Virus record (IMG/VR): IMGVR_UViG_3300027782_000025
Coordinates: 124,001-188,000 of that record
DNA length: 64,000 nt
Direction: 5' to 3' (one strand)
The notes beneath the pieces were generated by a model. The model did no database searches, was not told where the DNA came from, and saw only the letters and a program-made list of their open reading frames with translations. The position numbers were made by a program, and so were the translations under genes. This document shows, in pieces, positions 27,649 through 44,552 of the stretch. The stretch's first letter is position 1. Every line of letters begins with the position of its first letter.

Positions 27649-27971
27649 TCGCAATCAATTTCTTCATCTCTTGTCTTAAAAACAGAATTCTTTTTAGTGC
27701 TATGTAACTTCGCCAAATCATTCTCTGCTCTTATTCTTGGTGTAGCGACATTCCAAACATAATAATTTAATATATCGGTTTCAGTAGCATTACGTGGGCC
27801 GACATTTAGCATATGCCTAACGGTACGATCGCCGGTGCCAGGCACTTTCTCTATGATCTCTTGTATATTTTTGGGTTTTAGATTACAATATTGATTTAAT
27901 GTAAAATTGTTTGCTTCAAGTAGAGCATTGTAGGCCGGCTTTGCTATTTTATATGCGCCCCTCATTATCAT
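27645..27971 (-). CDS. Hypothetical protein
   Basis: 108 aa; ATGA-type overlap with dut. Confidence 0.6.
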   Translation of the reverse strand: MIMRGAYKIAKPAYNALLEANNFTLNQYCNLKPKNIQEIIEKVPGTGDRTVRHMLNVGPRNATETDILNYYVWNVATPRIRAENDLAKLHSTKKNSVFKTRDEEIDCD

Positions 27972-28528
27972 TTTCTTCCGGTAGAGCCAAAACCACCATC
28001 ATTGCGCGCTGTGTGATCAACGACACCAGCAATGATCTCTGGTTTAACTATACATTCGAGCATTGCTTGGGCGATACGGTCACCGTGGTTTATAGTTTGG
28101 GCGATATCGGAATTGTTTTTTATAGAAATAAAGATCTCACCACGATAATCAGAATCAACGATCCCTACTTGGTTAGCTAGATTGAGACCATTTAAACCGA
28201 TAGAAGATCTGATATATAATTTTAACACTAAATCTGAAGCAAATGATGCTTTATATCCAGTCGGTATCAAAATGGTTTCGGTGGGATGAATATATAACCG
28301 AGACATTTCTGATTCTTCAGAAGTAATATCGTCTAGTGCTTCGATATACTTCCTTAAATTTGTAGCATATGCATTATATAAAAAATGCTTTTTTCTTCCA
28401 TTTAGTAAGCATTCAGACATCCGGCGTGTTAAACATGCTGATATGTCAAAACACGCTGAGCCGCTTGTCTCGAATTTCGGCAGCGGCAAATCGTTACCAT
28501 TTAGCCTTTCTAAAGTTATTTTATACAT
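27968..28528 (-). CDS. dut: Trimeric dUTPase with an insertion
   Basis: All five motifs present: ACFDI, RSSIG, GIVDSDYRGEI, GDRIAQ, RNDGGFGSTG. Confidence 0.95.
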   Translation of the reverse strand: MYKITLERLNGNDLPLPKFETSGSACFDISACLTRRMSECLLNGRKKHFLYNAYATNLRKYIEALDDITSEESEMSRLYIHPTETILIPTGYKASFASDLVLKLYIRSSIGLNGLNLANQVGIVDSDYRGEIFISIKNNSDIAQTINHGDRIAQAMLECIVKPEIIAGVVDHTARNDGGFGSTGRK

Positions 28529-29318: not shown

Positions 29319-30335
29319 TTATTTTCTGTCTGCTCCAATAGATGTAATGTGGTTGATATACCAATCAATAGTTATCTTGAGACCTGAGTCAAAGTCAGTG
29401 GTCGCTTCGAAATTAAATTTTAGCGCCGCTTGGGTACTATCTAAGCTTCTTCGGGGCTGTCCGTTTGGCCTAGAAGTATCATATTTTATTAGACCTTCGT
29501 ACTCCATTAATTGTGCTATCTTGATCGTTAAATCTTTTATACTTATTTCTTTTCCTGACCCAAGATTTATCGGCTCTGGATCATCGTAAACCGCTGTGGC
29601 TTGGACTATGCCTTTTGCAGCATCATCCACATATAAAAATTCTCTGGTCGGTGAGCCATCGCCCCATACTACGACATGGTCTGCTTTGTTTATTTTAGCC
29701 TCATAAACCTTTTTGATAATTGCTGGAATAACATGCGACGTGCTATCATCGAAATTATCAAGTGGACCATATAGATTAGCTGGTAACAAATGTATTCCAT
29801 TAAAACCATACTCTTGGCGATAGGCTTGGCTTTGTACAAGCAAAGCCTTTTTTGCAATACCGTAAGCCGCATTTGTCTCTTCTGGATAGCCATTCCAAAT
29901 ATCTGATTCTTTAAATGGAGATGCTGTAAATTTAGGATAGGAGCAGACAGTGCCGACAGTAACGAATTTTCTAACATTATGTCTTCTAGCATACTCCTGC
30001 ATCAGTATGCCCATCATAGCATTTTTATAAAAAAAAGACCCAGGCGTTTTTTGATTTGCACCAATCCCGCCGACAGCTGCGGCAAGATGAATAACGACAG
30101 TCGGAGACAATCTGCTAAATAATTCAGAAACATGAGATTCAATCGTAAGATCAAATAATACTGAGCGATTAATGTAGACATTATTAGGTTTAGCTTTTTG
30201 TCCTCTAACGAACTCAGAGCCAAAGCCATTTTCCATGAAGCATTGGGCAACTTTATTGCCCAAAAAGCCGGCGCCACCGGTGATTAGAATCGATTCTCGC
30301 TTTAAATTATTCGCCAAGCTTTCTTTTATATTCAT
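29319..30335 (-). CDS. fcl: GDP-L-fucose synthase (extended SDR)
   Basis: TGGAGFLG, HLAAAVGGIGAN, YPEETNAAYGIAKK, PANLYGP.DNFD, SHVIPA, WGDGSPTREFLYVDD. Start refined to 30335 behind AGGAG. Confidence 0.93.
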   Translation of the reverse strand: MNIKESLANNLKRESILITGGAGFLGNKVAQCFMENGFGSEFVRGQKAKPNNVYINRSVLFDLTIESHVSELFSRLSPTVVIHLAAAVGGIGANQKTPGSFFYKNAMMGILMQEYARRHNVRKFVTVGTVCSYPKFTASPFKESDIWNGYPEETNAAYGIAKKALLVQSQAYRQEYGFNGIHLLPANLYGPLDNFDDSTSHVIPAIIKKVYEAKINKADHVVVWGDGSPTREFLYVDDAAKGIVQATAVYDDPEPINLGSGKEISIKDLTIKIAQLMEYEGLIKYDTSRPNGQPRRSLDSTQAALKFNFEATTDFDSGLKITIDWYINHITSIGADRK

Positions 30336-30591
30336 CACGCTCTCTCCTTGTGGCTTCAAGATCAAACGACATATAATTCAAATCAGATACTAATGAATCC
30401 ACTTTTTCTTTAGCAAGTATCGCTAAACCTTTATGGCAAACGGCAATATCGCGCATAATTTTGCTAAAAACACTTCTAAGTTCGAGTGCTGTCTTAGAAG
30501 GCAATAAAGCAATCATTTCCTCTAACATCTTTATGTCTTCAAGGATAGCAGTGTACTTCTTATTGATTTCTGATAATTCATCTTCAGAAAT
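30307..30591 (-). CDS. Hypothetical coiled-coil protein, possible ATT start
   Basis: The frame is open from the AGGAG-N6-ATT at 30591; the first ATG (30528) lacks a Shine-Dalgarno. Confidence 0.6.
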   Translation of the reverse strand: MSEDELSEINKKYTAILEDIKMLEEMIALLPSKTALELRSVFSKIMRDIAVCHKGLAILAKEKVDSLVSDLNYMSFDLEATRRERDEYKRKLGE

Positions 30592-33107: not shown

Positions 33108-36100
33108 TTATATATTGTAGTTTTTATCTGGCAATATATCTGGAAAATCCTGTCCGCCTTTATTCTTTTCAAAGGACAAAGCTCTACAATAATCAAGTTT
33201 AGGATAATTACTCTTGATGCGGTTTATTATCCTTATTTTAGGAACTTCGAGATCTACCTTTTTATTAATAATTACTATAATAGTGCGACTCTTGATTTCA
33301 TCGGTATAATTAGCCTCAACGAGATCTACGCAGGTGTTTGAAACCAAATAATATGGTTTATAAATGCTTTTCTTGAAATTTCTGGCGGCCATCAAAGATC
33401 CGACGGTAGCCAACTTGCCGTTAATCTGAAAACTTGGACTAAATAAATCGCGTTCGATCTTAAAAAATGTCGATTTATTCGCAGCAATAGAGATAGTCTC
33501 TGGGGTGCAACATAACTCACCAGCAAACGGGTCGCCTTCCTCTGGAGGAAATGGTACACAGACTAATCCATCTACACCATGTATTTTGGGTGTCAGAGTC
33601 GGACAATATGGTAATGGATATGGATAAGGCCCGTCTGGTACGATATAATATGAAATTGGACTACCAAATAATGTTGTCTCAAAAATAGCTGTTACTAAAA
33701 GAGCACTAATCCTCTTTTTAATAGTAAGCACGTATTCATACGACCCCACAACACCCATATCATTCTGAACAACTACAACATCATTGGGCGCAAATAAAGT
33801 CATGCTTTCGAGGACGCTCTGTATATCTGCGGCTGAAGCGTTATAATATATCCTATCTGAAAAGTAAATGGTTTTATCGACAGATTCGAATTTTAATATA
33901 TAAAACCCTGCAGTAGCATTACTATACGACCATCTAATCTTTTGCGGCTTACCTCCACCTATTTGAATTCTAACTACCGTGACTTCATCGCCAACTAGAT
34001 CGACCGACTGTATGCCCAACTGCTTTATAGGCTGAGCTGTCATTTTACCCTTATATTCCAAAGTCCAATCATAAACATTGCCGTTTTGGACTAATGTTAA
34101 TCCTATATCTTCAGCAGCATAAAAATCACAATTATCAATAATACTTTTCACTATGTCACTATTCGTAGCTGCTGCTTCGATAGGTGCTGTAGTACAAAAA
34201 GCACCGGCTGGGCTGTATAATGAAAGAGTATACCTGCCTGAGTTCGCTTTATAACTAAATTTTTGTACTTCGTTAACGCCGATTCCGCCGATCCAATCGA
34301 CATAAACCACATAATCCTTATTGGAAGTCGATAGCCTTGATACATTTTTTCCAGCCATAGAACCAACGAAATCTATGTGCCAAGGTCCAGTATATGGTCC
34401 ATCATAATTCGTAGTCTGGCCCGAAACAGTTACATTTCCAATACCTATGGACGGTAAGGCAAATAAGGCAGCTCTAACAGTATTAAGACTAGCATCATAA
34501 GGAATAGTAACTGTTTGCTCGCCATCAAAAAAAATCGTAAAAGCTCTATTAGAAGCAGAAACATTGCTTATAGTTTGTCTTTCATTCTTTGTACCGACCA
34601 CAGAACGATTTGTAAAAGCAAAGTAAGTTCCAATAAGCCCTTTGCTAACCGATTTCATGATAGGAATAGCCATACCCTTCAATGACCCGACGAACTCGAT
34701 TCTAAAACTTCTAGTTTCGACTGCTGTTACCAGAACATTGTTTGGTCCGATAAGCGTATTAGATTCTAATATAGTTTTTAAGGCTGCAGCAGTTGCATTA
34801 TAAGGAACAGTCACAGTCTGCGTCACGCCGCTTTTCGCAAACGTAAGTTTATAAGTACCACCATCCGCCAGCGGGACAGTTATATACTGCACTTCATTAG
34901 TAATTGAAGTCTCTGATATGTCAGCTATAACAAAATTTGGTTTTACCTTCTTAGCAAAAAGACTAATAGCTCCTATTTTTGGGTTAGGGATATCGCAGCC
35001 AGAAGGACGATCAGAAGTTAACGATGTACCATTATATATTAATTGGCTAGAAATCGGCGCGGAGCATTGATCAGCACCTGTTCCCGACGTATTATCTAAT
35101 ATTTCCTTGAAGGATAGCCATACGCCTACTTGCCCGTTTATCGCATTACCGATTGGCGGCCCCAAAGCAGTGCCGTTTGCGCTTGGTGGCCTAATATAGT
35201 CCCATCTACTGCTAGGAAATATTCTACTAAGATCTTGCGGTACTTCTAATATAGAACCTATATTAATGGTTCGAGTTAATCTCTTTGTATCTTTATTACA
35301 ATTGGTATAGTCAAGATGAACAACGATATCAGTAGCAGGATCTGGTTTGCAATTTGATTTATTATCAACACAACTTGGTGGTGTGTTGTTACGATCAATT
35401 ATCTTGTTCATTAAAAAGAAATATTCTATCGATTCTACAATCATGTCTGTTTTAAAATCACCAAAGAAAATCGAATAGGTATCTGCGATGTCCGTTGGAA
35501 CGTATTTCCCTGTAGCTTGGTCATATCTGCTAGAACCTGCAGGTATACACCAAATACAATTGTTATATAATGTAACGTCGGTTACTTTGAAATTGGTGAT
35601 AGCTTCCATCTGCGAATCACTTTGCCTTATTTGGTTTAGCACATATTGAGAAGGAGTGCCGCCATTACCGTTCTGCTTCCAATAATTGCATGTATCACTA
35701 TAATCGCAGTCAATTGGAACATTACTTCCAGCATAGGGCGATGACCTCCCATCAGTAATAACTTGACGATAAGCCATCTTCTTAACATTAGGCCTGCCGT
35801 AATCTCTATAAGTTACTTTAACAAAAGCTGAAAAAATATTCACTTCTTGGCGCGGGATACCGGTGACAGAAATGTTTAATTTTACATCTTTAATACCGTC
35901 TAGAATCACGGTCTGATCCAACAGCTTACATAACTTAATGCCATAAACGCCAACACCCTTAGGTATAAATTTAGAGCCATCAAATTCAGAAGTAATCGCC
36001 CCAGGTTTTAAATTATTCTTAAGCGTAATATTAAATGCTGCTGGCATGTCAAACAAGTAGGTCAATGACCCTGCAGTGGTAATTGCTGTCGGATTAACGC

Positions 36101-39056
36101 CTTGGAATGGGACCGATTGCACTTTTAGTTTTTCTAATGGTGTCGAGTCGAGTCGCGCCGGCAAATAATGAAACCTACTACCACCAGAAGTAATAATGTC
36201 GACCAAACCAGTAAGATTTTGCCCAGCATCGTCAGCACCTGTGCGATAATCAGATGTGGTTATGGTTAAAAAATATTTTCCTGCTTCAAGATTATAGTTC
36301 TTGCTGACAGATTCGCCATATCTAAGAACCAATTCATTACCAACAAAAGAATCAGAAACAGTAGCAACAGAACTGTTATTAAGATCCCAACAATTCATAT
36401 TTTTTGGCCCAAAATCATGCCTCTCAACACCCTTGACACCGACTGAACATTCTAAAGAGTCCCTAAAGAAAATACTGCTCACATTACCGCTTACCTCATA
36501 ACTATTTAATAAAACAGCTATAGAAGGAAAAAACTCGATACCTTTATTATCGACACCAGCGGATGGTACGGGCACATAATAATAATCAAGCATTATTTTG
36601 GTTGGCGAAGTGTCAAGCGATGCCCAAATAACAGAACCGCCAAAATCATCTATCGCTACCCAGTCTGCACGATTGGTGACAGGATAATATGCTGGTATAA
36701 TAAAAGTATCTAGCATATTATATTGTATCCCTGCCTGACTCGCAAACACTTTATTTAGAATCAAAGGGTTTATAGAGATACATCGGCCTGACTCTGGCGT
36801 AATTAAATTCTGATTAGTGTCTAAAATATCGTAGCACAACAAAAGCCCTGGCAATTTTTGGTTAGCGACAAATTCTGAAATTGGGGTAGCAGGCAAGTTC
36901 TTTATAAGATAGTTAAATATCGGCGCACACATAAAGCTAAAGCTACGCAGATTTGCCATCCCAGCCATAGGTAAATCAAGACTGACTATAGGAGTAATTT
37001 TAGTCACAATGCCTGTTTTATTGAAGATCGACACATCATAAACATAAGATCTTAGGATACTATAGCGTTTAATGTCTTGGGAGCCTGACGCATTAAACCC
37101 TACGAATAGAGCGCGATGGCCGGCAAATTCCGTAACGCCATTATAATCATAAGACGGCACATATCCTATACCAATACCAGTAATAGAAGGATATCTCCGT
37201 TCTGTCCTAGGTACTATATCTATACTATTAACTTCTATTTCTGATGATTTTCCTGTAATCACATCCACAGAATAAAGATGTCCAGAACCCGTGCCTATAA
37301 ACAATAACCTCATCCCAGGATCATACGCCTGAGCAGAAGGAGCATTATTGTCGAATCCTATGACATTATCAAATAAAAAAGGTAAAAAAGCAATTGCAGA
37401 ACGCTCTCGCGTTTTCATATTCATAGCAAAAAGCCTATAAGAAGCGTCATCAGACCGCTCTATATAAAAAACTCTATCAAACACTGAATCATAACTTATC
37501 AGAGATTCATTGTTTGCTAAAATCTCTGGTGCACGTGAGGATGTGTCTGGTAATGTGTAACTGCTGTTTATCTTAAAATGGGTCAGCGATTTTAAATTCG
37601 AACCTTTAAACAGAGACCCACCTTGCCATAATTCTTTAACTGAACCAAAGGCAGATACGCCTGGTGTCGTATTAGCGCCCACATAACCACATAAAGTATT
37701 AATAGAACTAGATATTTGGTCAAAATATTCACCGCCGGTTGCGGTTTGGCTATCTATAAGCACAACCGCTGCACTAGCGATACCAACCGATGCCACGAAA
37801 TTATAATAGTCTTGAGACGCGCTAATTGTCTCATCATTTAATATAAACAAAAATTTATGCCCACATTGTATGGCTTGCCGAAATGCTTCGAATTGATCAG
37901 AGCCACCCACAGCAGAGTCGACATAATTAAAATCATCGTCTAACGACAATCCGGTAGAACGATGGTCGACATAAATGCAAAAAATCTTCGTCGCTAAAGA
38001 TCTAAATCTAAGATAATCAGCTGGTTCTACTTTCTTGAGGTCAGCGCCGTTTAAAGAAAAATCATTATCAGCCATACCTGATAAATTCTTGGTCGAATCG
38101 ATTAATATCTGATAATTTAAAGGACCAGTATGACCACTAGTTCGAAACATCTGGTTAAGCATTAGACCACTAGCTGGTACTAAATCAAACCGCCAACTTC
38201 CATCTAAAGCCTTGCCGGAGCTTGTTAGAGCTAATTCCATCCTAAACCCGACAGATCTAACTATAGATGAAACTGCTATATTGCTAAGACTGCCATATGA
38301 TTGATTATTAAACCCATAAGTAAACGCATTCGCAGTCGAAACACCGATAATGTTAACAGTCGAAGAATTGACAGGCTCTGAAATCATGGCCGCATATTTA
38401 TCAACCATTATCCTATCGTTTTCGCAAGAATTATCCCAAAATCCCTTTAAAGTATTCAGTGAAAGCTTATAATATTGTTTACCAGCAAAGAACCCAATAT
38501 ATTCGGGCGTACCCCTGACTTTCGATATTGCTAACCTATAATCGTACCCACCACTAAGTAAAGCTTTGTTGGTTTGTAGCAAAGCCCTTCCTGGAGCGAC
38601 TCCTGTGTTTAAACTAGATGCATCTATGAAATGTAAGTCGATAGAACACTTATCACTATTCTTTCTACAAGAAACCGACGTACCGAATTTTTGAAAATTT
38701 ATTGTAGGTAGGTTCGGGATAGTCGATGTGTTAGTTGGTATACTTGCTGTTGTGTCTAAATTAATATCCTGCCCTAAGAAACTCACTGCATTAAACGATG
38801 CCAAAATCACATTCGGTCGTCTTATTAATTCCCTTAAAGAACCTGGGATTTTCTCTACATTAGTTATAAACTTGTTGGTGGGCGGTGCTGTAGCAGCGGG
38901 CGTGTCGCAGGCTTGATAATCGATACCATTTAGAATCCTAGGTAAACTGCTTTCAACAGTTTTATACTTATCATTACAAACCATTAGTAATGAATCGACA
39001 TCTACAGAGATTAATTCGACATAATTGGATCTCGATATATCTGATTGATCTGCCAT
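33108..39056 (-). CDS. Very large virion / receptor-binding-like protein (beta-propeller-like middle, four repeated C-terminal modules)
   Basis: 1982 aa; propeller-like blades (AYDPGMRLLFIGTGSGHLYSVDVITG); four NEVQ-type repeats. Confidence 0.7.
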   Translation of the reverse strand: MADQSDISRSNYVELISVDVDSLLMVCNDKYKTVESSLPRILNGIDYQACDTPAATAPPTNKFITNVEKIPGSLRELIRRPNVILASFNAVSFLGQDINLDTTASIPTNTSTIPNLPTINFQKFGTSVSCRKNSDKCSIDLHFIDASSLNTGVAPGRALLQTNKALLSGGYDYRLAISKVRGTPEYIGFFAGKQYYKLSLNTLKGFWDNSCENDRIMVDKYAAMISEPVNSSTVNIIGVSTANAFTYGFNNQSYGSLSNIAVSSIVRSVGFRMELALTSSGKALDGSWRFDLVPASGLMLNQMFRTSGHTGPLNYQILIDSTKNLSGMADNDFSLNGADLKKVEPADYLRFRSLATKIFCIYVDHRSTGLSLDDDFNYVDSAVGGSDQFEAFRQAIQCGHKFLFILNDETISASQDYYNFVASVGIASAAVVLIDSQTATGGEYFDQISSSINTLCGYVGANTTPGVSAFGSVKELWQGGSLFKGSNLKSLTHFKINSSYTLPDTSSRAPEILANNESLISYDSVFDRVFYIERSDDASYRLFAMNMKTRERSAIAFLPFLFDNVIGFDNNAPSAQAYDPGMRLLFIGTGSGHLYSVDVITGKSSEIEVNSIDIVPRTERRYPSITGIGIGYVPSYDYNGVTEFAGHRALFVGFNASGSQDIKRYSILRSYVYDVSIFNKTGIVTKITPIVSLDLPMAGMANLRSFSFMCAPIFNYLIKNLPATPISEFVANQKLPGLLLCYDILDTNQNLITPESGRCISINPLILNKVFASQAGIQYNMLDTFIIPAYYPVTNRADWVAIDDFGGSVIWASLDTSPTKIMLDYYYVPVPSAGVDNKGIEFFPSIAVLLNSYEVSGNVSSIFFRDSLECSVGVKGVERHDFGPKNMNCWDLNNSSVATVSDSFVGNELVLRYGESVSKNYNLEAGKYFLTITTSDYRTGADDAGQNLTGLVDIITSGGSRFHYLPARLDSTPLEKLKVQSVPFQGVNPTAITTAGSLTYLFDMPAAFNITLKNNLKPGAITSEFDGSKFIPKGVGVYGIKLCKLLDQTVILDGIKDVKLNISVTGIPRQEVNIFSAFVKVTYRDYGRPNVKKMAYRQVITDGRSSPYAGSNVPIDCDYSDTCNYWKQNGNGGTPSQYVLNQIRQSDSQMEAITNFKVTDVTLYNNCIWCIPAGSSRYDQATGKYVPTDIADTYSIFFGDFKTDMIVESIEYFFLMNKIIDRNNTPPSCVDNKSNCKPDPATDIVVHLDYTNCNKDTKRLTRTINIGSILEVPQDLSRIFPSSRWDYIRPPSANGTALGPPIGNAINGQVGVWLSFKEILDNTSGTGADQCSAPISSQLIYNGTSLTSDRPSGCDIPNPKIGAISLFAKKVKPNFVIADISETSITNEVQYITVPLADGGTYKLTFAKSGVTQTVTVPYNATAAALKTILESNTLIGPNNVLVTAVETRSFRIEFVGSLKGMAIPIMKSVSKGLIGTYFAFTNRSVVGTKNERQTISNVSASNRAFTIFFDGEQTVTIPYDASLNTVRAALFALPSIGIGNVTVSGQTTNYDGPYTGPWHIDFVGSMAGKNVSRLSTSNKDYVVYVDWIGGIGVNEVQKFSYKANSGRYTLSLYSPAGAFCTTAPIEAAATNSDIVKSIIDNCDFYAAEDIGLTLVQNGNVYDWTLEYKGKMTAQPIKQLGIQSVDLVGDEVTVVRIQIGGGKPQKIRWSYSNATAGFYILKFESVDKTIYFSDRIYYNASAADIQSVLESMTLFAPNDVVVVQNDMGVVGSYEYVLTIKKRISALLVTAIFETTLFGSPISYYIVPDGPYPYPLPYCPTLTPKIHGVDGLVCVPFPPEEGDPFAGELCCTPETISIAANKSTFFKIERDLFSPSFQINGKLATVGSLMAARNFKKSIYKPYYLVSNTCVDLVEANYTDEIKSRTIIVIINKKVDLEVPKIRIINRIKSNYPKLDYCRALSFEKNKGGQDFPDILPDKNYNI
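33720..34898 (-). repeat. Four degenerate ~95-aa protein repeats: NE(V/R)Q...G.(Y/F).L.F...T..I.YNA....(V/I)...LE......N(V/I).V......(W/Y).I.F
   Basis: Units begin NEVQYITV, NERQTISN, NEVQKFSY and KPQKIRWS. Conservation is at protein level only; the DNA has diverged. Confidence 0.8.
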
Positions 39057-39057
39057 A

Positions 39058-39585
39058 TTAATTTCCTAGAATCTTATAGGCTGTAATTTTCTTATCCGAT
39101 TTCGGACGCGTTACTTTAAAAATCAATCCAAATCGTTTTAAATCGCTATGATTATCGCCATCTGTCCATCTTTTGAAAAATTCTTTTTTCGGCAAATAAC
39201 CATTATTTTTTTTCTTTTTGAATGGGTCTTCAAAAAAGATATTATCTTCGTCGCACCCCATAGCCACTACAAAGTGACCATGATCATTTGATCTTATCAG
39301 GCAAAGTATCGGATTTCCGATTTTAATTTCCTTTTGAAGTCTAGAAAGAGACATGCCGTGGTATTCTTGAAAATTAAGACCTAGTAATTTACAAGCACTA
39401 ACTAATTCTTGTGTGCTTGTGCCTTTGCCTTTGGTACTACCCAATAACCTGGTGTATTTTGATAAGTCGTTTTTATCTTCGGGATGTTCGTATTCATAGA
39501 TCGACTTCAGAGCTGCCGCCCCGCAGTCATAGTCGTGCTTTTGAGCAACCCTTGGCAATGATATATTAACCTTCGTAGTCTTCAT
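39058..39585 (-). CDS. Peptidase C39-like cysteine protease
   Basis: Q..DYDCGAAAL (catalytic Cys), GHFVV (His) and FEDP (Asp); stand-alone, no ABC transporter domains. Confidence 0.85.
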   Translation of the reverse strand: MKTTKVNISLPRVAQKHDYDCGAAALKSIYEYEHPEDKNDLSKYTRLLGSTKGKGTSTQELVSACKLLGLNFQEYHGMSLSRLQKEIKIGNPILCLIRSNDHGHFVVAMGCDEDNIFFEDPFKKKKNNGYLPKKEFFKRWTDGDNHSDLKRFGLIFKVTRPKSDKKITAYKILGN

Positions 39586-39594
39586 ATAATATAT

Positions 39595-40038
39595 TTAATC
39601 GCCACGATTGTACGATGCCCAATCATCAACCAACGATAATATCCGTTTTTTCTCGTTGAGTGCTTTACGCTCTGTTGTGAATAGTATTGATTCTGGGTGC
39701 CAATCTCCGCTACCATCGAAATAATAGAATTCGCCGGTATTAGCGCAGCGTTTGATAGCCGACACTTCGAAACATATTATATTGAATTGGCCGACAAGAA
39801 GTGATGATAATATGCTGAAAACCGCGCTAGGTAGTCTAGGACATATATATTTTGATTTTGTATTGTATTTATATATCTTTTTAACGAAGAATATCTTTGG
39901 ATGGCAAGCTAACATCCAATTTAGTTCGCTTGGTACTAGATCCTTATCGGAATTAGTGTATAAATCTATAAAATATAATTTATTTCCTATTTTATATTTA
40001 GATAATTCGATTACAGATTTGATTTTTTTCTTGATCAT
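39595..40038 (-). CDS. Hypothetical protein
   Basis: Start refined to 40038 (TAATG overlap with the upstream stop). Confidence 0.6.
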   Translation of the reverse strand: MIKKKIKSVIELSKYKIGNKLYFIDLYTNSDKDLVPSELNWMLACHPKIFFVKKIYKYNTKSKYICPRLPSAVFSILSSLLVGQFNIICFEVSAIKRCANTGEFYYFDGSGDWHPESILFTTERKALNEKKRILSLVDDWASYNRGD

Positions 40039-40250
40039 TAACCAAGGATAACCTTGTTTATAGCTTGATTTACTATGTCTTCCGCCATTTTCTTTTTTAC
40101 GCCAGAAACGATAGATTCCCAACTGGCTCCGGTTTTGATCTCGATCTGGTGGTCACCATTATTAATCGGTTGTCCAGCCATAGGCACTATTCTAACGTTG
40201 CTTGCGCCGATAGACTTTATTTTCTGGATTGCTTCATTGACATTGAGCAT
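40038..40250 (-). CDS. Hypothetical protein (70 aa)
   Basis: AGGAG Shine-Dalgarno; abuts both neighbours. Confidence 0.7.
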   Translation of the reverse strand: MLNVNEAIQKIKSIGASNVRIVPMAGQPINNGDHQIEIKTGASWESIVSGVKKKMAEDIVNQAINKVILG

Positions 40251-41063
40251 CTAAATACTCCTAAATAAATTATTAAACACTTCTAAAGCCAATTTAAACG
40301 TTTCTTTCTTTCCAATCGTACTGCCGAAACGCCTTCCAAGCGACGGTCTAAATATAGCATATTTACCACCATTCAAAATATGTTCATCTATAGCCTTAAT
40401 AATATTTGTAGCGCCTTGACCGACAGGATAAAAACCGGAACCAGTTTTAAAATCCCTAGCAATTATGCTATAAACACAAGTTTTAAGAGGCTCAAACCAA
40501 CGATCGTGAGGATTCTTATTGCTTTTCTCCATAAAACGGCAAGGATCATATGATAATTTAAACCTTTTGTGTGACGATAAAAACTTCTGAAGACTTTCTG
40601 TGTTATCTAGTAACATCGTATCAGTCATTTCTAACACCGGTACAAGCGACATCGACACAGCAAATGACGATAGTTTACTAATGAAATCATTGAAACTTGT
40701 CATATCGATAAATGATGATTTTTCGATTCCGATCTGAATAGCTTTGGCTTTAAAATATGATGCGATCGAAAGTTCTCTATCTATATCCTTTTGTACTATT
40801 GTTTTTCCATGTCCCAATTCTATCCTTACGATATTGATAGGCATATCTGCCAATTTTTTCTTAATTCTTTCTATGGTAATGTCCGGCAAAGAAGTTAGTG
40901 ATAATCCATTTATATTAAGTATAGATGCTGATTTGAATCCGCTGTCTCTGATAAGATCTATAGATTCATCGATGTTATCATGATGTTCGTCGATGCAGGC
41001 CGAGACTTCTAAATTATTACGATAGGTCAATGACGTGGTCATATTGTGGGCCAGTTCCAACAA
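40251..41063 (-). CDS. Xylose-isomerase / AP-endonuclease-2-like TIM barrel with a degenerate metal site
   Basis: SACIDE, PVLE, SYDPCRF, IIARD and PVGQG follow the spacing of the sugar-phosphate isomerase/epimerase family. Likely start is 41042. Confidence 0.7.
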   Translation of the reverse strand: MLELAHNMTTSLTYRNNLEVSACIDEHHDNIDESIDLIRDSGFKSASILNINGLSLTSLPDITIERIKKKLADMPINIVRIELGHGKTIVQKDIDRELSIASYFKAKAIQIGIEKSSFIDMTSFNDFISKLSSFAVSMSLVPVLEMTDTMLLDNTESLQKFLSSHKRFKLSYDPCRFMEKSNKNPHDRWFEPLKTCVYSIIARDFKTGSGFYPVGQGATNIIKAIDEHILNGGKYAIFRPSLGRRFGSTIGKKETFKLALEVFNNLFRSI

Positions 41064-42216
41064 GCGTTACAGGTATTCCGGCAACATCCTCAAGCATCTT
41101 TATGAAATCAAGGATCTTCGGGGTAAGTTTGTCTCTTGATGATGAAGCAAAGCAAGTCCAGTCGATGTAATTAGCAAAATTAAGAGCTAATTTGGTAGCG
41201 CCATTAACCATCACAGCCTCACGCAGTTGTCTTTTAGAAAAAGAAAATACTCTTCTGACCCTCTTTGTAACTGTCGTTTTCTCTTTTTCTCTTAAGATAG
41301 TTGCATATTCTAATGGCATCTCTGATTTTCTAGCTATTTCTTCCCAATCAATTTCGACCTGATCGTCATACCCTCCGCCAGAATATCCCTTCTGAACGCC
41401 TTCTTCAATCACATTACCGACTCTGATTGGATAAGGCCGAAGTACAAGGTAAACATCACCAAGGTACTTTGGAGAAATCCCCATATCGGCTAAGTTTTGA
41501 ACTGCAGAAGTGCCACGGCTAGTGCAAGTGGGGTATGAATGACCGTGGTTGATGTCAAGTGAGAATCCTTGTGCGCCTTCATGTAAAAATGTGAACGTAG
41601 CTCTAAGCACACAGTCAATATATTCGTGAAGAGCTTCACAATGGTGTTTACACATTACATTAAATGGATCAAAAAGCGACATGTCCTCTAATATGGCAGA
41701 AGGTCGTGTCCACGTTTTGCAAAATACAAATCTGCTTAACTCTTCATAATCCACTGCTAGCTTCGTCCCCGGCAGCCTTTGTATCTTGTCTGCTATGGCA
41801 GCACCACAACCTTGCATTGTGCTCGCTAGATGCTTAGTGCTGTCTTTGCCTTCATTTTCCCTTGCTCTGTGCTCTTCCGTGATTACCATAGCTCTTTGGT
41901 GAATAATAAGCCTATCTATACTTCCTGTTAATTCTACTTCTTTCATCAGCTGTAGTAAAGTAAATGCAGAAGAAGAACCCATGATTATCCAAGGATTGTA
42001 ATTTGGTAGCCATTTCCTCAAGATCGCAGCCGATGGCATCGCTTTTGCAATATATGCAGTACCGTCTACGTTAACAGCTGTATGACCAGCATTAGCCATG
42101 TTTGTATTTGATAAAAATTCGGGTCTGTATTTTTGTGCGAGATAAGAAGTTATCAGACCTTTACCAGTGCTGCCGAACTGACCATCAGTAACCACATTGA
42201 ACTTACCGCGTTGCAT
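41017..42216 (-). CDS. purZ: PurZ-type N6-succino-2-amino-2'-deoxyadenylate synthase (adenylosuccinate synthase paralog)
   Basis: QFGSTGKG (Ser16 in place of the PurA catalytic Asp), NAGHT, STMQG, HEGAQGFSL, YPTCTSR, PIRVG, TTVTKRVRRVFSFS, LNFANY (not the PurA motif TKLD), GTGP. Confidence 0.85.
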   Translation of the reverse strand: MQRGKFNVVTDGQFGSTGKGLITSYLAQKYRPEFLSNTNMANAGHTAVNVDGTAYIAKAMPSAAILRKWLPNYNPWIIMGSSSAFTLLQLMKEVELTGSIDRLIIHQRAMVITEEHRARENEGKDSTKHLASTMQGCGAAIADKIQRLPGTKLAVDYEELSRFVFCKTWTRPSAILEDMSLFDPFNVMCKHHCEALHEYIDCVLRATFTFLHEGAQGFSLDINHGHSYPTCTSRGTSAVQNLADMGISPKYLGDVYLVLRPYPIRVGNVIEEGVQKGYSGGGYDDQVEIDWEEIARKSEMPLEYATILREKEKTTVTKRVRRVFSFSKRQLREAVMVNGATKLALNFANYIDWTCFASSSRDKLTPKILDFIKMLEDVAGIPVTLVGTGPQYDHVIDLS

Positions 42217-42499
42217 CTTGAGCCTCCGCCGAAGAATTATTCAGATAAGATTTTATCAGTTCAAGCATAAGATTCTCTTTACCATGAAAGCCTTCATCGT
42301 AAGCATGCCTTAAAGCCCCGATGTCTATATTATTTAATACCTTTTTTAAATTTATAGCATTGTCAATTGCTTTTAATCTGTTTAGTATATCAGAAGCTTC
42401 AGCTGACATACGCGATTTTTCAGAATGTAACCATTGTTCGGTCTTAAATAAAAGACCGATATCATCATCAAGCTGGTCTAATATTTCAATAATGTTCAT
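42203..42499 (-). CDS. Hypothetical helical protein
   Basis: 98 aa, overlapping purZ and the DeoC-like gene. Confidence 0.65.
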   Translation of the reverse strand: MNIIEILDQLDDDIGLLFKTEQWLHSEKSRMSAEASDILNRLKAIDNAINLKKVLNNIDIGALRHAYDEGFHGKENLMLELIKSYLNNSSAEAQDATR

Positions 42500-43197
42500 T
42501 TTTTCACCGTATTAATGCTTCTAATTATGCCCTTGGTCTGCTGAAGACTGGCACCGAACCTTTTTGCAGGTTCGCAAGCCAGTAAATCTTCAATACAGTC
42601 GAGATTACCACTCACTTTTATCGGGCACTTTAAGAATTGCGACATGTTGGTGATAAAAGCGCTGTGTATAGCTGGATTGGCTTTATAATTCTGAGTCTTT
42701 AAGGTGATATCATCTCGAATTAAAGTCGGCGTCTTTAGATCACGAAAGGCTTCATAGGCACTGGCTAGATCTGCTTCATCCTTAGTCCTCGTGCCTATAA
42801 CGAATCTTATCTCGCAAAGCTCACCGATAAACTTCTTTAAAAACTCAGTGCACGAAATAATTTCTTTTCTAATATCACCCTTTTGCTTTTTTGGCGATAT
42901 GTATATTTCAAAACCATCTGTTTCTAAAGAATCTAAGCTTAAGCCCTTGAACTTGTCTGTAGAAAAGACTTCACCCTTAGGCCAATCTACTGGCGTAATG
43001 ATCTTATACTTCCCTTTCGATCTGCCTCTGCAAACCAAAGCATCAGAGCTTAATGAAGGATGTACTATAATCGCAGGCAAACGATACTTGTGAGCTAATT
43101 CGAAAGATTCTAAGATCTCATTGCCTTGGAAAACATCTATTTCGATTCTCGTGAGCAGTTCGCCATTAGTCATTTTCTTGTTCCGTGATTTTATCAA
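42496..43197 (-). CDS. DeoC (deoxyribose-phosphate aldolase)-like TIM barrel lacking the canonical Schiff-base Lys motif
   Basis: AIIVHP, IITPVDWPKG, PIKVSG and KRFGAS align in order with DeoC AVCV.P, V.TV..FP.G, .IKASGG and .RIGTS. The FVKTSTG motif is replaced by LIRDDI. Confidence 0.65.
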   Translation of the reverse strand: MIKSRNKKMTNGELLTRIEIDVFQGNEILESFELAHKYRLPAIIVHPSLSSDALVCRGRSKGKYKIITPVDWPKGEVFSTDKFKGLSLDSLETDGFEIYISPKKQKGDIRKEIISCTEFLKKFIGELCEIRFVIGTRTKDEADLASAYEAFRDLKTPTLIRDDITLKTQNYKANPAIHSAFITNMSQFLKCPIKVSGNLDCIEDLLACEPAKRFGASLQQTKGIIRSINTVKK

Positions 43198-43555
43198 GTG
43201 CGCCTTTTAGAGCATCAATATCTCTGATAATATTTACATGGTCTAAGAAATAAAATGATTTCTTCTCGAAATCTTCACCGTTAGTAATAATCACGACCGG
43301 TTTACAAAGCGCTAAAGCTATACCAAGCTCGACATGCGAACCAAGCCTCGCTGGCATTAACATAACCAAAACATCGCAATCGACGACACCTTGATATTCT
43401 TTAAGTCCGATCTCCTTAAGCGAAACCTCATCGTTTACACCACCATGGGTGGTCCAATCATAAGTAATAGTGCATTGCAAATATGCAAGATACTTAAATA
43501 AAGCTTTAACATTGGTTTTATTATATAAACTAGAAGCAACGTAAATCTTAGTCAT
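43166..43555 (-). CDS. Nucleoside 2-deoxyribosyltransferase / Rcl-like (d)NMP N-glycosidase
   Basis: KIYVASS, ITYDWT, EYQGVVDCDVLV and GSHVELGIALALCKPV, with the catalytic Glu retained. Confidence 0.82.
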   Translation of the reverse strand: MTKIYVASSLYNKTNVKALFKYLAYLQCTITYDWTTHGGVNDEVSLKEIGLKEYQGVVDCDVLVMLMPARLGSHVELGIALALCKPVVIITNGEDFEKKSFYFLDHVNIIRDIDALKGALDKITEQEND

Positions 43556-43562
43556 TAACCTT

Positions 43563-44552
43563 CTACTCCTTGGGTTTTAAATAATCACGCAAAATTTCAG
43601 ACGCAGCCATCTTATGATCAAGTTTGTTGAACATAGACATAAAAGGCCATGGGTTGACAGAGCTACAGAAGGTGAATTTATCTCTTTCCTTCTCAGACAT
43701 CGATTCAAAAGCCGTAACATAATATTCTGCTTCCTTCTCGAATCTTTTCGCCCTGTTTTCTGGCAATACATCAGGATTTGTTCCATAAAAATGTAATTTC
43801 TTTAAATCCGTCGATGGATTCATATCAACGCCAAAGATGTAAATCTTATCGAAATTCATCCAAAGCGCAATCTGCATGCTGGCGAATACGCTACTTCTGC
43901 CTATGCATAAACCATCAACTAAATCCTTGCTAAAAGATTTAACGCCAATGTTTCTAAACTGAATAGTGCCCGTCTTTCGTCTTTGTATGGACGATGAATT
44001 AAAAATTGTCCCATTAAATTCATCCCAAAGAGCAGCGTGCCTTTGTATCTGGGAAGAATCAAAAAAAGCCCAGTAATCAGTAGGCCATAGCCTAGGGTCA
44101 GGATAGTTTACAGATAAAAATTCTATTCCTGGCCTGTGCTTGAGGCTTCTCAAATCGACTTCATTCAGCGTTGGGCCATTGCCTATGATGATAAGCGTTT
44201 TCCCTCGGCCGGTGTCTTTCAAAGATCTAGTCTTTTCTAAATAAATCGGGTCTACAGTACGTGAAATATAAGTAACACGTGGTTCCCGCTTTTTCTTTAT
44301 ATCCTGTCTTTGCATCGCCTGCTGCTGGCGAACTTCAACCGCCCCTGCCTTCTTGGGCGCAACTCTGGCACTATCTTGAATTTTCGTCGGTGGTTTTTCG
44401 GGCTTAGGTGGTAGAGGCGCAGAACGCTGCTGGTGACGCACGCCTGGTTGAGGACCATTTACTATCGATACTTTAACTGCCTGAGCTTTTAGTCTAGTCA
44501 GTAGATGGGAACTGTGTACAGCATTAGGCGAAATAGCCCTATTGTATCTCAT
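43563..44552 (-). CDS. DUF115 / MAF-like, GT42 (sialyltransferase)-like transferase with a low-complexity N-terminus
   Basis: LIIIGNGPTLNEVDL, GRSSVFASMQIALWMNFDKIYIFGVDM and HFYG; the first ~100 aa are rich in P, K, Q and R. Confidence 0.7.
   Translation of the reverse strand: MRYNRAISPNAVHSSHLLTRLKAQAVKVSIVNGPQPGVRHQQRSAPLPPKPEKPPTKIQDSARVAPKKAGAVEVRQQQAMQRQDIKKKREPRVTYISRTVDPIYLEKTRSLKDTGRGKTLIIIGNGPTLNEVDLRSLKHRPGIEFLSVNYPDPRLWPTDYWAFFDSSQIQRHAALWDEFNGTIFNSSSIQRRKTGTIQFRNIGVKSFSKDLVDGLCIGRSSVFASMQIALWMNFDKIYIFGVDMNPSTDLKKLHFYGTNPDVLPENRAKRFEKEAEYYVTAFESMSEKERDKFTFCSSVNPWPFMSMFNKLDHKMAASEILRDYLKPKE

What the first reader, a model, noticed from the sequence alone, without database searches (positions are those of the whole stretch)
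40251..43555. purZ neighbours (Rcl/NDT-like glycosidase, DeoC-like and isomerase barrels) as a possible alternative Z-pathway module
Seen: five overlapping same-strand genes, in order NDT/Rcl-like, DeoC-like, 98-aa protein, purZ, TIM barrel. The glycosidase keeps Tyr, an acidic residue and the catalytic Glu (GSHVELG). Established: Rcl/DNPH1-type enzymes cleave dNMPs into base plus deoxyribose 5-phosphate, which is the DeoC substrate. Known Z clusters remove dATP with DatZ. Inference: this phage may deplete dAMP, or swap bases, at the monophosphate level instead. That would be a Z-support route I do not know to be described.
Basis: inference. Interest (0 to 1): 0.75.

Follow-up and report, generated by a model that had tools for sequence, protein, structure and literature searches.

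The report
Jumbo-phage PurZ module with odd barrels
This is the probable 2-aminoadenine (Z-base) DNA gene cluster of an uncultured giant phage; depleting dAMP with an NDT-type enzyme is already published, but its constant partner is an undescribed protein family shaped like deoxyribose-phosphate aldolase that lacks that enzyme's key catalytic lysine.

Summary
Five overlapping minus-strand genes (43555 to 40251) encode an NDT-superfamily protein, a DERA-fold barrel, a 98-aa protein, a PurZ (Ser at the PurA Asp13 position) and a xylose-isomerase-like barrel. All are under purifying selection (dN/dS 0.006-0.08).

The window is a fragment of an uncultured jumbo myovirus. About 20 related large contigs, one a complete 356-kb genome, keep the block. 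No DatZ, MazG, DUF550, DUF5664 or PurB was found in those searched, and positive controls worked. dUTPase-family genes are present.

- dAMP removal or base swapping by an NDT enzyme next to PurZ is already published (DmtZ, NAR 2026; NDT preprint 2025).
- This NDT is not a DmtZ orthologue, and its PurZ lies on the PurZ side of the tree, not PurZ0. That suggests independent recruitment.
- The "DeoC-like" protein is not a canonical aldolase. The Schiff-base lysine is an invariant arginine across a family of about 220 clusters with no Pfam model.
- That protein is the most constant PurZ companion and is kept where the NDT is missing.
- The window's isomerase-like barrel lacks two of the four canonical metal ligands.

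Verdict: a new variant of a known kind, containing an undescribed enzyme family of unknown chemistry.

The parts
43166..43555 (-). NDT-superfamily protein, 129 aa. Probable dNMP (dAMP) N-glycosidase or phosphodeoxyribosyl transferase; a functional analogue of DmtZ, not an orthologue.
   Evidence: PF05014 E 1.7e-5. Profile vs PDB: CMP N-glycosidase 4JEN 1e-6, NDTs 4e-5, BlsM and MilB. Y5, D33, W34, E53, P68, E76 are invariant. Against Ghobes DmtZ: 18% identity, HHalign probability 17.6%. dN/dS 0.03-0.04.
42496..43197 (-). DERA-fold TIM barrel, 233 aa, from an undescribed family. Arg161 sits at the Schiff-base Lys position and Arg131 at the K137 position. K194 (=K201), E19 (=D16), E97 (=D102) and the RFGAS phosphate motif are kept.
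   Evidence: AF2 pLDDT 90. Foldseek top 50 PDB hits are all DERA; AFDB clusters agree. HHalign vs 17 DERAs: probability 92.7%, E 4e-7, with residue mapping. 220 clusters in 1.84 billion representatives. 0 of 61 members hit Pfam DeoC. K82 and R161 invariant. dN/dS 0.006-0.008.
42203..42499 (-). Conserved 98-aa protein of unknown function, between the DERA-like gene and purZ.
   Evidence: HMM hits at the same position in nearly all relatives, including L161. No Pfam or PHROG match. dN/dS 0.014-0.04.
41017..42216 (-). PurZ, 399 aa: 2-aminodeoxyadenylosuccinate synthetase homologue.
   Evidence: phrog_1211 1.9e-63 and PF00709 2e-33. Best PDB matches are phiVC8 PurZ 1e-43 and S-2L PurZ 2e-37. Ser16 at the E. 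coli PurA Asp13 position. The tree groups it with canonical PurZ, apart from PurZ0 and PurA (95/89), in its own large-phage clade (96/95).
40251..41063 (-). Xylose-isomerase-like (AP_endonuc_2 superfamily) TIM barrel, 270 aa, with an incomplete metal site in this copy.
   Evidence: AF2 pLDDT 87. Foldseek hits: sugar and sugar-phosphate epimerases, dehydratases. HHalign vs six E. coli paralogues: 94.6%. E144 and D173 are kept; canonical His maps to Ile201 and Glu to Arg238, where relatives have Asp and Glu. dN/dS 0.07-0.08. Absent in L036, L138 and L161.
43563..44552 (-). MptE-like (DUF115 / WaaZ-like) protein, 329 aa, directly upstream. It is part of the conserved block; its functional membership in the module is uncertain.
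   Evidence: PF01973 E 1e-5, below cut-off. Atlas neighbours are MptE-like or glycosyltransferase-like viral clusters. Conserved at 38-55% identity in all relatives, including L036, L138 and L161. Carries an intein in L125.
40038..40250 (-). Conserved 70-aa protein downstream of the barrel; part of the syntenic block.
   Evidence: dN/dS about 0.007.
27968..28528 (-). dUTPase-family protein, 186 aa. Candidate dNTP pyrophosphatase (DutZ-like role possible). Lies next to ThyX, so an ordinary dUTPase role is equally possible.
   Evidence: PF00692 2.4e-17 and PF22769 9e-10. dUTPase-family genes are present in all five related genomes, two in G001. 32-36% identical to ordinary phage dUTPases.
976..4356 (-). 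Class II ribonucleotide reductase with an intein. The phage makes its own deoxynucleotides, dA nucleotides included.
   Evidence: RNR_Alpha 8e-29, RNR-II_ins_dom, LAGLIDADG_3, Hom_end, Hint_2.

Best explanation
The locus is the purine-replacement (2-aminoadenine, Z) nucleotide module of a lineage of uncultured jumbo myoviruses.

Shown:
- A bona fide PurZ-clade enzyme with the Asp13-to-Ser change.
- A minimal NDT-superfamily protein with an intact Tyr/Glu/Glu catalytic set.
- A DERA-derived barrel and a xylose-isomerase-like barrel.
- All are under purifying selection and syntenic in about 20 large phage contigs.
- The related genomes searched show no match to DatZ, MazG, DUF550, DUF5664 or PurB. 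They carry dUTPase-family genes and a class II RNR.

Inferred mechanism:
1. A dUTPase-family enzyme converts dATP and dGTP to dAMP and dGMP.
2. PurZ condenses dGMP with aspartate.
3. Host PurB and host kinases finish dZTP.
4. The NDT protein removes adenine at the monophosphate level (dAMP to adenine plus deoxyribose 5-phosphate, or transfer of that sugar phosphate to another base). This is what DmtZ does in PurZ0 phages, but with an independently recruited NDT lineage.

The DERA-derived barrel keeps the phosphate site and the K201, D102 and D16 equivalents, but has Arg at the Schiff-base position. I take it to bind the deoxyribose-5-phosphate moiety, either free from the NDT reaction or as part of a nucleotide. 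It would transform it by chemistry other than canonical K167 Schiff-base aldol cleavage. It is the core PurZ partner. The NDT and the isomerase-like barrel are accessory.
For: - PurZ identity.
- NDT superfamily and catalytic residues. Its closest solved relatives by sequence are nucleotide N-glycosidases (4JEN, BlsM, MilB). Arg70 lies six residues before the catalytic Glu in the phage clade.
- Published precedent for NDT plus dUTPase-type adenine exclusion without DatZ or MazZ: PMC12884076 and the bioRxiv preprint.
- DatZ, MazG, DUF550, DUF5664 and PurB not found in G001-G005, with positive controls in Bm1 and SH-Ab 15497.
- dUTPase genes in all five genomes.
- DERA ancestry and residue mapping.
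- The DERA-like family sits next to nucleotide genes in divergent contexts: NDT upstream in L161; a dCTP-deaminase/dUTPase-like gene directly downstream in L036 and L162; a dCMP deaminase nearby.
- It occurs once per large genome, always with PurZ, and is absent from two small PurZ phages.
- Purifying selection.
- Inteins in PurZ in L125 and in the RNR in the window mark them as core replication-linked genes.
Against: - No biochemical or DNA-composition data exist for any member of this lineage.
- The whole ten-gene block is syntenic, so linkage may be inherited rather than functional.
- The NDT protein was not found in L132 (a fragment), L138 (70% complete) or L036. It is unlinked in G005. 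The DERA-like protein therefore does not depend on it.
- The Schiff-base Lys is Arg in every family member.
- The 186-aa dUTPase sits next to ThyX and may be an ordinary dUTPase.
- Complex prediction gave no answer.
- The window's own record is only about 21% complete. Absence claims rest on relatives.
Confidence: 0.55

Rival explanations
1. The NDT-like glycosidase cleaves dAMP, a true deoxyribose-phosphate aldolase then splits deoxyribose 5-phosphate into glyceraldehyde 3-phosphate and acetaldehyde, and an isomerase barrel processes the product. Together they form a catabolic sink that drains dAMP.
For: DERA is the closest fold by far. The K201, D102 and D16 equivalents and the RFGAS phosphate motif are retained. 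The NDT and DERA-like genes overlap. DERA is the standard in-vitro coupling enzyme for DmtZ. A neighbouring Lys (K194), with Arg161 supplying the positive charge, could in principle take over as nucleophile (inference).
Against: Arg replaces the Schiff-base Lys in all 61 aligned members and also replaces K137. No member matches Pfam DeoC. The DERA-like gene persists where no NDT was found. Aldose-ketose isomerisation of a 2-deoxy sugar has no chemical basis (established chemistry). The window's barrel lacks two metal ligands.
Confidence: 0.15
2. The DERA-derived barrel, possibly with the isomerase-like barrel, acts on a nucleotide of the PurZ pathway itself. One example is a phage-encoded substitute for adenylosuccinate lyase (PurB), releasing fumarate from the PurZ product. 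Another is making or salvaging dGMP or dZMP.
For: It is the most constant PurZ neighbour across PurZ identities down to about 30%. No Lyase_1 (PurB) was found in five genomes, one complete, whereas Ghobes encodes its own PurB. Two invariant or near-invariant arginines (R131, R161) could hold carboxylates or phosphate (inference). It has the strongest purifying selection in the block.
Against: No precedent exists for such chemistry on a DERA scaffold. Small Z phages manage with host PurB. Complex prediction with PurZ gave no support (not evidence either way). In L162 no PurZ lies within 6 kb downstream.
Confidence: 0.15
3. The barrels and the MptE-like gene are not part of Z metabolism. They belong to a sugar or glycosylation pathway, or to another lineage-specific function. 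They sit beside purZ only because the block is inherited intact.
For: The whole block orf448, orf256, MptE-like, NDT, DERA-like, orf98, PurZ, barrel, orf70, orf175b is syntenic. The MptE-like protein resembles WaaZ- or glycosyltransferase-like proteins. The window also has an NAD-dependent sugar epimerase/dehydratase and a GT2 glycosyltransferase. Xylose-isomerase-like barrels are mostly sugar epimerases and dehydratases.
Against: In rearranged relatives the DERA-like gene stays beside nucleotide-metabolism genes (NDT, DCD-like, dCMP deaminase, PurZ). It lies between the NDT gene and purZ with overlapping reading frames.
Confidence: 0.1
4. The PurZ homologue of this lineage does not make Z. 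It uses another acceptor and yields a different modified purine, and the neighbouring enzymes elaborate it.
For: It is only 33-37% identical to characterised PurZ proteins and forms its own clade. It has an unusual neighbour set with two non-canonical barrels.
Against: It has the diagnostic Ser at Asp13. It groups with canonical PurZ to the exclusion of PurZ0, and both of those groups make Z (PMC12884076).
Confidence: 0.05

Closest known systems
DmtZ / DutZ adenine-exclusion system of PurZ0 phages (Gordonia phage Ghobes, Arthrobacter phage Wayne; PMC12884076)
   Same: PurZ-type synthetase together with an NDT-superfamily enzyme and dUTPase-family enzyme(s). No match to DatZ or MazZ. The NDT protein keeps the Tyr / acid-or-amide / Glu triad and shares a WT.HG motif and a PA..G..E segment with DmtZ.
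   Different: The NDT here is 129 aa and 18% identical to DmtZ. HHalign probability is 17.6%, and its HMM does not find DmtZ. The segment carrying DmtZ Asp12 is absent. By spacing from the next strand, Glu53 takes the place of Asn77 (my reading). The PurZ is on the PurZ side of the tree, not PurZ0. The hosts are jumbo myoviruses. Two extra TIM barrels are present.
Canonical Z cluster PurZ-DatZ-MazZ/DUF550-DpoZ (S-2L, phiVC8, SH-Ab 15497, Burkholderia phage Bm1)
   Same: The PurZ has the Ser replacement and is phylogenetically nearest to this group.
   Different: No DatZ (PF12917, or Bm1 DatZ used as query), MazG, DUF550 or DUF5664 was found in related genomes. Those families are detected in Bm1 and SH-Ab 15497 by the same search. 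Only a weak PolA-like ORF of about 400 aa is present.
Deoxyribose-phosphate aldolase (DERA/DeoC, PF01791)
   Same: Same (beta/alpha)8 fold with TM 0.72-0.78. Full-length HHalign match. K201, D102 and D16 equivalents and the RFGAS phosphate-binding motif are kept.
   Different: Schiff-base Lys167 is replaced by Arg161 (invariant) and Lys137 by Arg131. An extra invariant Lys82 is present. There is no Pfam match in any of 61 members.
Rcl/DNPH1, MilB, BlsM and BcmB nucleotide N-glycosidases of the NDT superfamily
   Same: Closest solved relatives by sequence profile. Shared (S/T)H(V/I)E(L/I)G catalytic segment.
   Different: Much shorter (129 aa). It has its own invariant TYDWT.HG motif. Substrate is unknown. 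Arg70 sits where, from memory of the literature, Rcl has Ser87 and nucleoside NDTs have Asp92; this was not tested here.
Xylose-isomerase-like sugar(-phosphate) epimerases and dehydratases (FrlC, UlaE/SgbU, YcjR, IolE, AsbF; PF01261)
   Same: Fold (TM 0.62-0.71). HHalign 94.6%, with the first Glu and the Asp ligands conserved.
   Different: No Pfam match. The His ligand is Asp in relatives and Ile in the window. The last Glu is Arg in the window.

Membership tests
PurZ (2-aminodeoxyadenylosuccinate synthetase) | Adenylosuccinate-synthetase homology | tested here: met
   PF00709 2.3e-33 and phrog_1211 1.9e-63. PDB PurZ phiVC8 1e-43 and S-2L 2e-37.
PurZ (2-aminodeoxyadenylosuccinate synthetase) | Ser in place of the catalytic Asp13 of PurA. 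This criterion is used in PMC12884076 and in the 2025 preprint. | tested here: met
   GSTGKG in the window against GDEGKG in E. coli PurA. Ser is present in all phage rows and is invariant in alignment A7.
PurZ (2-aminodeoxyadenylosuccinate synthetase) | Phylogenetic placement with PurZ rather than PurA or PurZ0 | tested here: met
   ML tree of 27 rows. The group with phiVC8, S-2L, SH-Ab and Bm1 has support 95/89. The window's own large-phage clade has 96/95. PurZ0 (Ghobes, Wayne) and E. coli PurA fall outside. Caveats: few outgroups and no archaeal PurA.
PurZ (2-aminodeoxyadenylosuccinate synthetase) | Activity on dGMP plus Asp; Z in virion DNA | not testable with these tools
   No isolate or biochemical data exist.
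NDT superfamily (PF05014) | Sequence-profile membership | tested here: met
   The single sequence scores 25.4 bits, below the 28.8 cut-off. Most homologues carry PF05014. The family profile hits 4JEN at 1e-6 and NDT structures at 4e-5.
NDT superfamily (PF05014) | Catalytic Tyr, Asp/Glu/Asn and nucleophile Glu | tested here: met
   Y5, E53 and E76 are invariant in 29 sequences. E53 aligns with the catalytic Asp of 8QC0.
DmtZ (dAMP hydrolase / dR5P transferase of PurZ0 phages) | Membership of the monophyletic DmtZ group | tested here: not met
   18% identity. HHalign probability 17.6%, E 0.0014, over 61 columns. The NDT family HMM finds no hit in Ghobes or Wayne at E<=0.01. tblastn against 50,697 phage records gives no match.
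DmtZ (dAMP hydrolase / dR5P transferase of PurZ0 phages) | Asp12 (adenine N6 recognition) and Asn77 | tested here: not met
   The Asp12-bearing insertion is a gap in the NDT129 family. By spacing, the Asn77 position is Glu53.
DmtZ (dAMP hydrolase / dR5P transferase of PurZ0 phages) | dAMP-specific hydrolysis and transfer to the Z base | not testable with these tools
   Needs an enzyme assay.
DERA / DeoC class I aldolase (PF01791) | (beta/alpha)8 DERA fold | tested here: met
   Foldseek top 50 PDB hits are all DERA, E down to 2e-11, TM 0.72-0.78. AFDB clusters agree.
DERA / DeoC class I aldolase (PF01791) | Match to the Pfam DeoC model | tested here: not met
   0 of 61 members match at E<=1. 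The window protein has no Pfam hit.
DERA / DeoC class I aldolase (PF01791) | Schiff-base lysine on strand 6 (E. coli K167) | tested here: not met
   HHalign aligns LIR161D with FIK167T. R161 is invariant in 61 sequences. K167 of the window lies six residues later and is present only in the nearer half of the family.
DERA / DeoC class I aldolase (PF01791) | K201, D102 and the phosphate-binding motif | tested here: met
   K194 aligns with K201, E97 with D102, and RFGAS with RFGASS. K194 is at least 90% conserved.
Xylose-isomerase-like TIM barrel (AP_endonuc_2, PF01261) | Fold and profile homology | tested here: met
   Foldseek E 3e-10 to 5e-11. HHalign vs six E. coli paralogues: 94.6%, E 7e-8. 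Note that the Pfam model itself does not hit.
Xylose-isomerase-like TIM barrel (AP_endonuc_2, PF01261) | Glu-Asp-His-Glu metal site | tested here: not met
   E144 and D173 align with the invariant Glu and Asp. The His position is Ile201 and the last Glu is Arg238 in the window. Several relatives have Asp and Glu at these positions.
Canonical Z cluster | DatZ and MazZ/DUF550(/DUF5664) present in the genome | tested here: not met
   Not found in G001-G005, G088 or G089. They are found in the control phages Bm1 and SH-Ab 15497, and DUF5664 is found in G090. The window's own record is a 21%-complete fragment.

The most novel reading that the evidence does not exclude
The DERA-derived barrel with Arg at the Schiff-base position (about 220 sequence clusters, all so far from large phage contigs) is a new enzyme of Z-nucleotide metabolism that is obligatorily paired with PurZ in jumbo phages. 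It might be a phage-encoded replacement for adenylosuccinate lyase, or a new deoxyribose-5-phosphate- or dNMP-converting activity. Either would add an undescribed step to the aminoadenine pathway.
Probability: 0.3. Interest if true: 0.8.

Novelty: new variant of a known kind. Interest (0 to 1): 0.6.

Why it matters
Z-genomes have so far been characterised in small siphoviruses and podoviruses. They use two known support kits: DatZ plus MazZ or DUF550, and DutZ plus DmtZ.

This locus would extend Z biosynthesis to a diverse lineage of 150-400 kb phages. In the paper searches made here, no paper linking PurZ or diaminopurine to jumbo phages was found.

It would also be a further independent recruitment of an NDT enzyme for adenine exclusion.

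Most usefully, it points to an uncharacterised, strongly constrained DERA-derived family as the constant PurZ partner. A natural DERA scaffold with its nucleophilic lysine swapped for arginine is of interest for enzyme evolution and for enzymatic synthesis of Z-DNA precursors.

Tried and rejected
- blastn of the locus and tblastn of the NDT protein against 50,697 phage records found no match.
- HHalign of the DERA-like family against E. coli DeoC alone was uninformative, with probability below 1%.
- The profile search against PDB sequences found nothing real.
- The genome-contig scan with E. coli DeoC returned only orthologues at least 89% identical, useless for a profile.
- A MAFFT alignment of the four E. 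coli DeoC-family paralogues was unreliable and was discarded.
- A phylum-wide search finally gave 16 diverse DERAs, which made the mapping possible.
- The HD-domain protein found only in G002 was considered as a DatZ. It was rejected: it hits the generic HD model only and has no similarity to Bm1 DatZ.
I did not send those sequences again. I repeated the job with an alignment of window and related-locus sequences only. The result was 'no answer' and is evidence for nothing.
- Extended members of the DERA-like family (300-358 aa) were checked for fused domains. No Pfam domain was found.
- Two context look-ups returned only contigs under 2 kb without DNA.

Full report
**What is there**

The window is the reverse strand of an IMG/VR virus record of 75,320 bases that CheckV rates about 21% complete.
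- 43166-43555 (129 aa)
- 42496-43197 (233 aa)
- 42203-42499 (98 aa)
- 41017-42216 (399 aa)
- 40251-41063 (270 aa)

Each overlaps the next. They lie inside a longer run of tightly packed same-strand genes, from 45324 down to at least 33108. Overlap alone therefore does not set the five apart.

Against two close relatives (L004, L005) all five have dN/dS between 0.006 and 0.084. The 233-aa gene is the most constrained and the 270-aa gene the least. All five are real genes.

Elsewhere the window encodes:
- tail sheath, baseplate and gp15-like proteins
- SbcC, SbcD, a helicase and a Toprim protein
- ThyX and a dUTPase-family protein
- a sugar epimerase/dehydratase and a GT2 glycosyltransferase
- an intein-bearing class II ribonucleotide reductase

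The phage is a large myovirus that makes its own deoxynucleotides.

**PurZ**

The 399-aa protein matches PHROG 1211 (1.9e-63) and PF00709. Its best solved relatives are the PurZ proteins of phiVC8 (1e-43) and S-2L (2e-37). E. coli PurA scores only 1e-17.

It has GSTGKG where PurA has GDEGKG, which is the Asp13-to-Ser change used to define PurZ.

In a maximum-likelihood tree with E. coli PurA, PurZ0 (Ghobes, Wayne) and canonical PurZ, it falls in a well-supported large-phage clade (96/95). That clade groups with canonical PurZ (95/89) and excludes PurZ0. It is at most 37% identical to any PurZ in 50,697 deposited phage records.

**The lineage and the linkage**

Scans of IMG/VR with PurZ and with the 233-aa family recovered about 20 distinct large contigs of 75-408 kb. 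One is a 274,625-base contig with an identical PurZ (G001). Another is a complete 355,825-base genome with terminal repeats (G002).

HMM searches show one conserved block:

orf448 (opposite strand) - orf256 - MptE-like - NDT - DERA-like - orf98 - PurZ - barrel - orf70 - orf175b

The block persists down to PurZ identities of about 30% (L036, L161, L138).

Its variations are informative:
- The NDT gene is absent near PurZ in L132/L134, L036 and L138, and was not found anywhere in the L132 and L138 records.
- In G005 the NDT gene sits about 12 kb away on the other strand.
- The isomerase-like barrel is absent in L036, L138 and L161.
- The DERA-like gene is present once in every large genome, always with PurZ.
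- In L036 and L162 a dCTP-deaminase/dUTPase-like gene directly follows the DERA-like gene.
- Two small PurZ phages have none of these genes: L015 (basal to the clade) and L016 (a complete 43.5-kb genome). L015 instead carries a DUF5664 pyrophosphatase next to PurZ.

**Absence of the canonical helpers**

Five related genomes were searched: G001 (70% complete), G002 (100%) and G003-G005. None has a match to:
- YfbR-like/DatZ (PF12917)
- MazG
- DUF550
- Lyase_1/PurB
- Bm1 DatZ used as a query

DUF5664 was sought in G001, G002 and G005 of that set and not found. The L132 and L138 records (G088, G089) were also negative for DatZ, DUF550 and DUF5664. The same searches do find DatZ and DUF550 in Burkholderia phage Bm1 and Acinetobacter phage SH-Ab 15497, and DUF5664 in G090.

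One generic HD protein occurs only in G002 and is unrelated to DatZ. dUTPase-family genes occur in all five genomes, with two in G001. The window's copy (27968-28528) lies next to ThyX.

**The NDT protein**

The single sequence scores just under the PF05014 cut-off. It has more than 100 homologues, most of which carry that domain. They include small proteins of Bacillaceae that the source databases name 'group-specific protein'.

A 29-sequence profile hits the following in the PDB:
- CMP N-glycosidase 4JEN (1e-6)
- several nucleoside deoxyribosyltransferases (4e-5)
- BlsM and MilB

Y5, D33, W34, E53, P68, G72, E76 and others are invariant. E53 aligns with the catalytic Asp of a solved NDT. In the phage clade an arginine (R70) lies six residues before the nucleophile Glu. 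From my memory of the Rcl and NDT literature, that position discriminates 5'-phosphate from 5'-OH. This is an inference, not a test.

**What is already known**

A 2026 paper (PMC12884076) showed the following:
- PurZ0 phages Ghobes and Wayne lack DatZ and MazZ.
- They use a dUTPase-like DutZ (dATP and dGTP to dAMP and dGMP).

A 2025 preprint associated PF05014 with dZ-enriched aquatic contigs and showed a dA-preferring transferase.

The window's NDT protein is nonetheless not a DmtZ orthologue:
- It is 18% identical to DmtZ, with HHalign probability 17.6%.
- Its HMM does not detect DmtZ in Ghobes or Wayne.
- The segment carrying DmtZ Asp12 is missing.
- It accompanies a PurZ-side rather than a PurZ0 synthetase.

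This looks like another independent recruitment of the same fold for the same job.

**The DeoC-like protein**

It has no Pfam or PHROG match. An AlphaFold model from 32 homologues (pLDDT 90) finds only DERAs among the top 50 PDB hits, and mostly DERAs among AlphaFold DB clusters.

An exhaustive profile search found 220 clusters (193 at E<=1e-10) and did not run into the large cellular DeoC family. None of 61 diverse members matches Pfam DeoC.

With 16 diverse bacterial DERAs plus E. coli DeoC, HHalign gives a full-length alignment (probability 92.7%, E 4e-7). It maps:

| Window residue | E. coli DERA residue |
|---|---|
| E19 | D16 |
| E97 | D102 |
| R131 | K137 |
| R161 | K167 (the Schiff-base lysine; LIRD against FIKT) |
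| K194 | K201 |
| RFGAS | RFGASS |

R161 and K82 are the only invariant residues across the 61 sequences. The lysine six residues after R161 is present only in the nearer half of the family.

The family is thus a DERA derivative that keeps the phosphate site and part of the proton relay but has lost the canonical nucleophile. It cannot be assumed to cleave deoxyribose 5-phosphate. A nucleophile swap to K194, or quite different chemistry on a deoxyribose-5-phosphate-bearing ligand, both remain open.

**The isomerase-like barrel**

The model (pLDDT 87) matches xylose-isomerase-like epimerases and dehydratases: FrlC, UlaE/SgbU, YcjR, IolE and AsbF. HHalign against six E. coli paralogues gives 94.6%.

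- The first Glu (E144) and the Asp (D173) ligands are kept.
- The His ligand position is Asp in most relatives but Ile201 in the window.
- The last Glu is Arg238 in the window, and Glu in about half of the relatives.

It is the fastest-evolving gene of the block and is dispensable in some relatives.

**Synthesis**

The best-supported reading is a Z-genome module in jumbo phages. It combines PurZ with an NDT-type, DmtZ-like adenine-exclusion step, fed by a dUTPase-family pyrophosphatase. The host is assumed to supply PurB and kinases.

The novel element is the DERA-derived, lysine-less barrel that always travels with PurZ. Its function is unknown. I favour binding and conversion of the deoxyribose-5-phosphate moiety by non-canonical chemistry. 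Rivals are:
- a true aldolase with a swapped nucleophile
- a PurB-like or other nucleotide-level step
- mere synteny with a sugar pathway

A complex prediction for PurZ, NDT and the DERA-like protein gave no answer. Paper searches for PurZ with 'aldolase', PurZ with 'jumbo', and diaminopurine with 'jumbo phage' found nothing describing such a module.

**Limits**
- No member of this lineage is cultured.
- The Z content of its DNA is not shown.
- Absence claims rest on relatives, because the window's own record is a fragment.
- Residue mappings rest on profile alignments and a predicted model, not on superposed coordinates.

Noticed in passing
window 976-4356 (-): The 1126-aa ORF is a class II (B12-dependent) ribonucleotide reductase interrupted by an intein with a LAGLIDADG homing endonuclease.
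   Followed up: partly
L125:11738-15376 and L125:7525-9573: In one relative the PurZ ORF is 1212 aa, with intein splicing and two LAGLIDADG segments. The MptE-like ORF is 682 aa and also carries an intein. An intein in the MptE-like gene suggests it is a conserved, important enzyme.
   Followed up: partly
window 43563-44552 (-): The MptE-like (DUF115 / WaaZ- or Maf-like) protein directly upstream of the NDT gene is more conserved across the lineage than PurZ: 38% against 29% identity in L036. Its role is unknown; it may be a glycosyltransferase or a pyrophosphokinase.
   Followed up: partly
window 27968-30365 (-): A dUTPase-family gene (186 aa), ThyX and an NAD-dependent sugar epimerase/dehydratase lie in a row. 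The near-identical 274-kb relative G001 has a second, canonical dUTPase. Which copy, if either, acts on dATP or dGTP is open.
   Followed up: partly
window 39058-39585 (-) and 33108-39056 (-): A C39-family cysteine peptidase (E 4e-16) lies immediately upstream of a 1982-aa ORF with no annotation.
   Followed up: no
L015:6063-6593 (43-kb contig, PurZ basal to the jumbo clade): A DUF5664 (PF18909) dATP/dGTP diphosphohydrolase-type gene lies 1.4 kb upstream of PurZ. This record has no NDT, DERA-like or isomerase-like barrel. Alternative helper sets thus accompany closely related PurZ genes.
   Followed up: yes
G002:254902-255600 (-); also G001, G003, G004: A roughly 400-aa ORF gives weak, split matches to the DNA_pol_A model. 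In G002 it lies about 8 kb from PurZ. It may be a divergent or split family-A polymerase. Its relation to DpoZ was not examined.
   Followed up: no
window 12001-14000, inside ORF 11257-15936 (-): Local AT skew of 0.278 and GC of 0.46, well above the window's background. The 1559-aa ORF has no significant Pfam match.
   Followed up: no
L138 (IMGVR_UViG_3300023202_000383, 256,507 bases): IMG/VR classes this record as a provirus. Here the PurZ homologue is on the opposite strand, 1.8 kb from the DERA-like gene.
   Followed up: no
P0076-P0133: The nearest cellular relatives of the 129-aa NDT protein are proteins of about 130 aa from Bacillaceae and Leuconostoc, named 'group-specific protein' in their source databases. 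They have Gly in place of the phage clade's Arg70. Their function appears uncharacterised.
   Followed up: no
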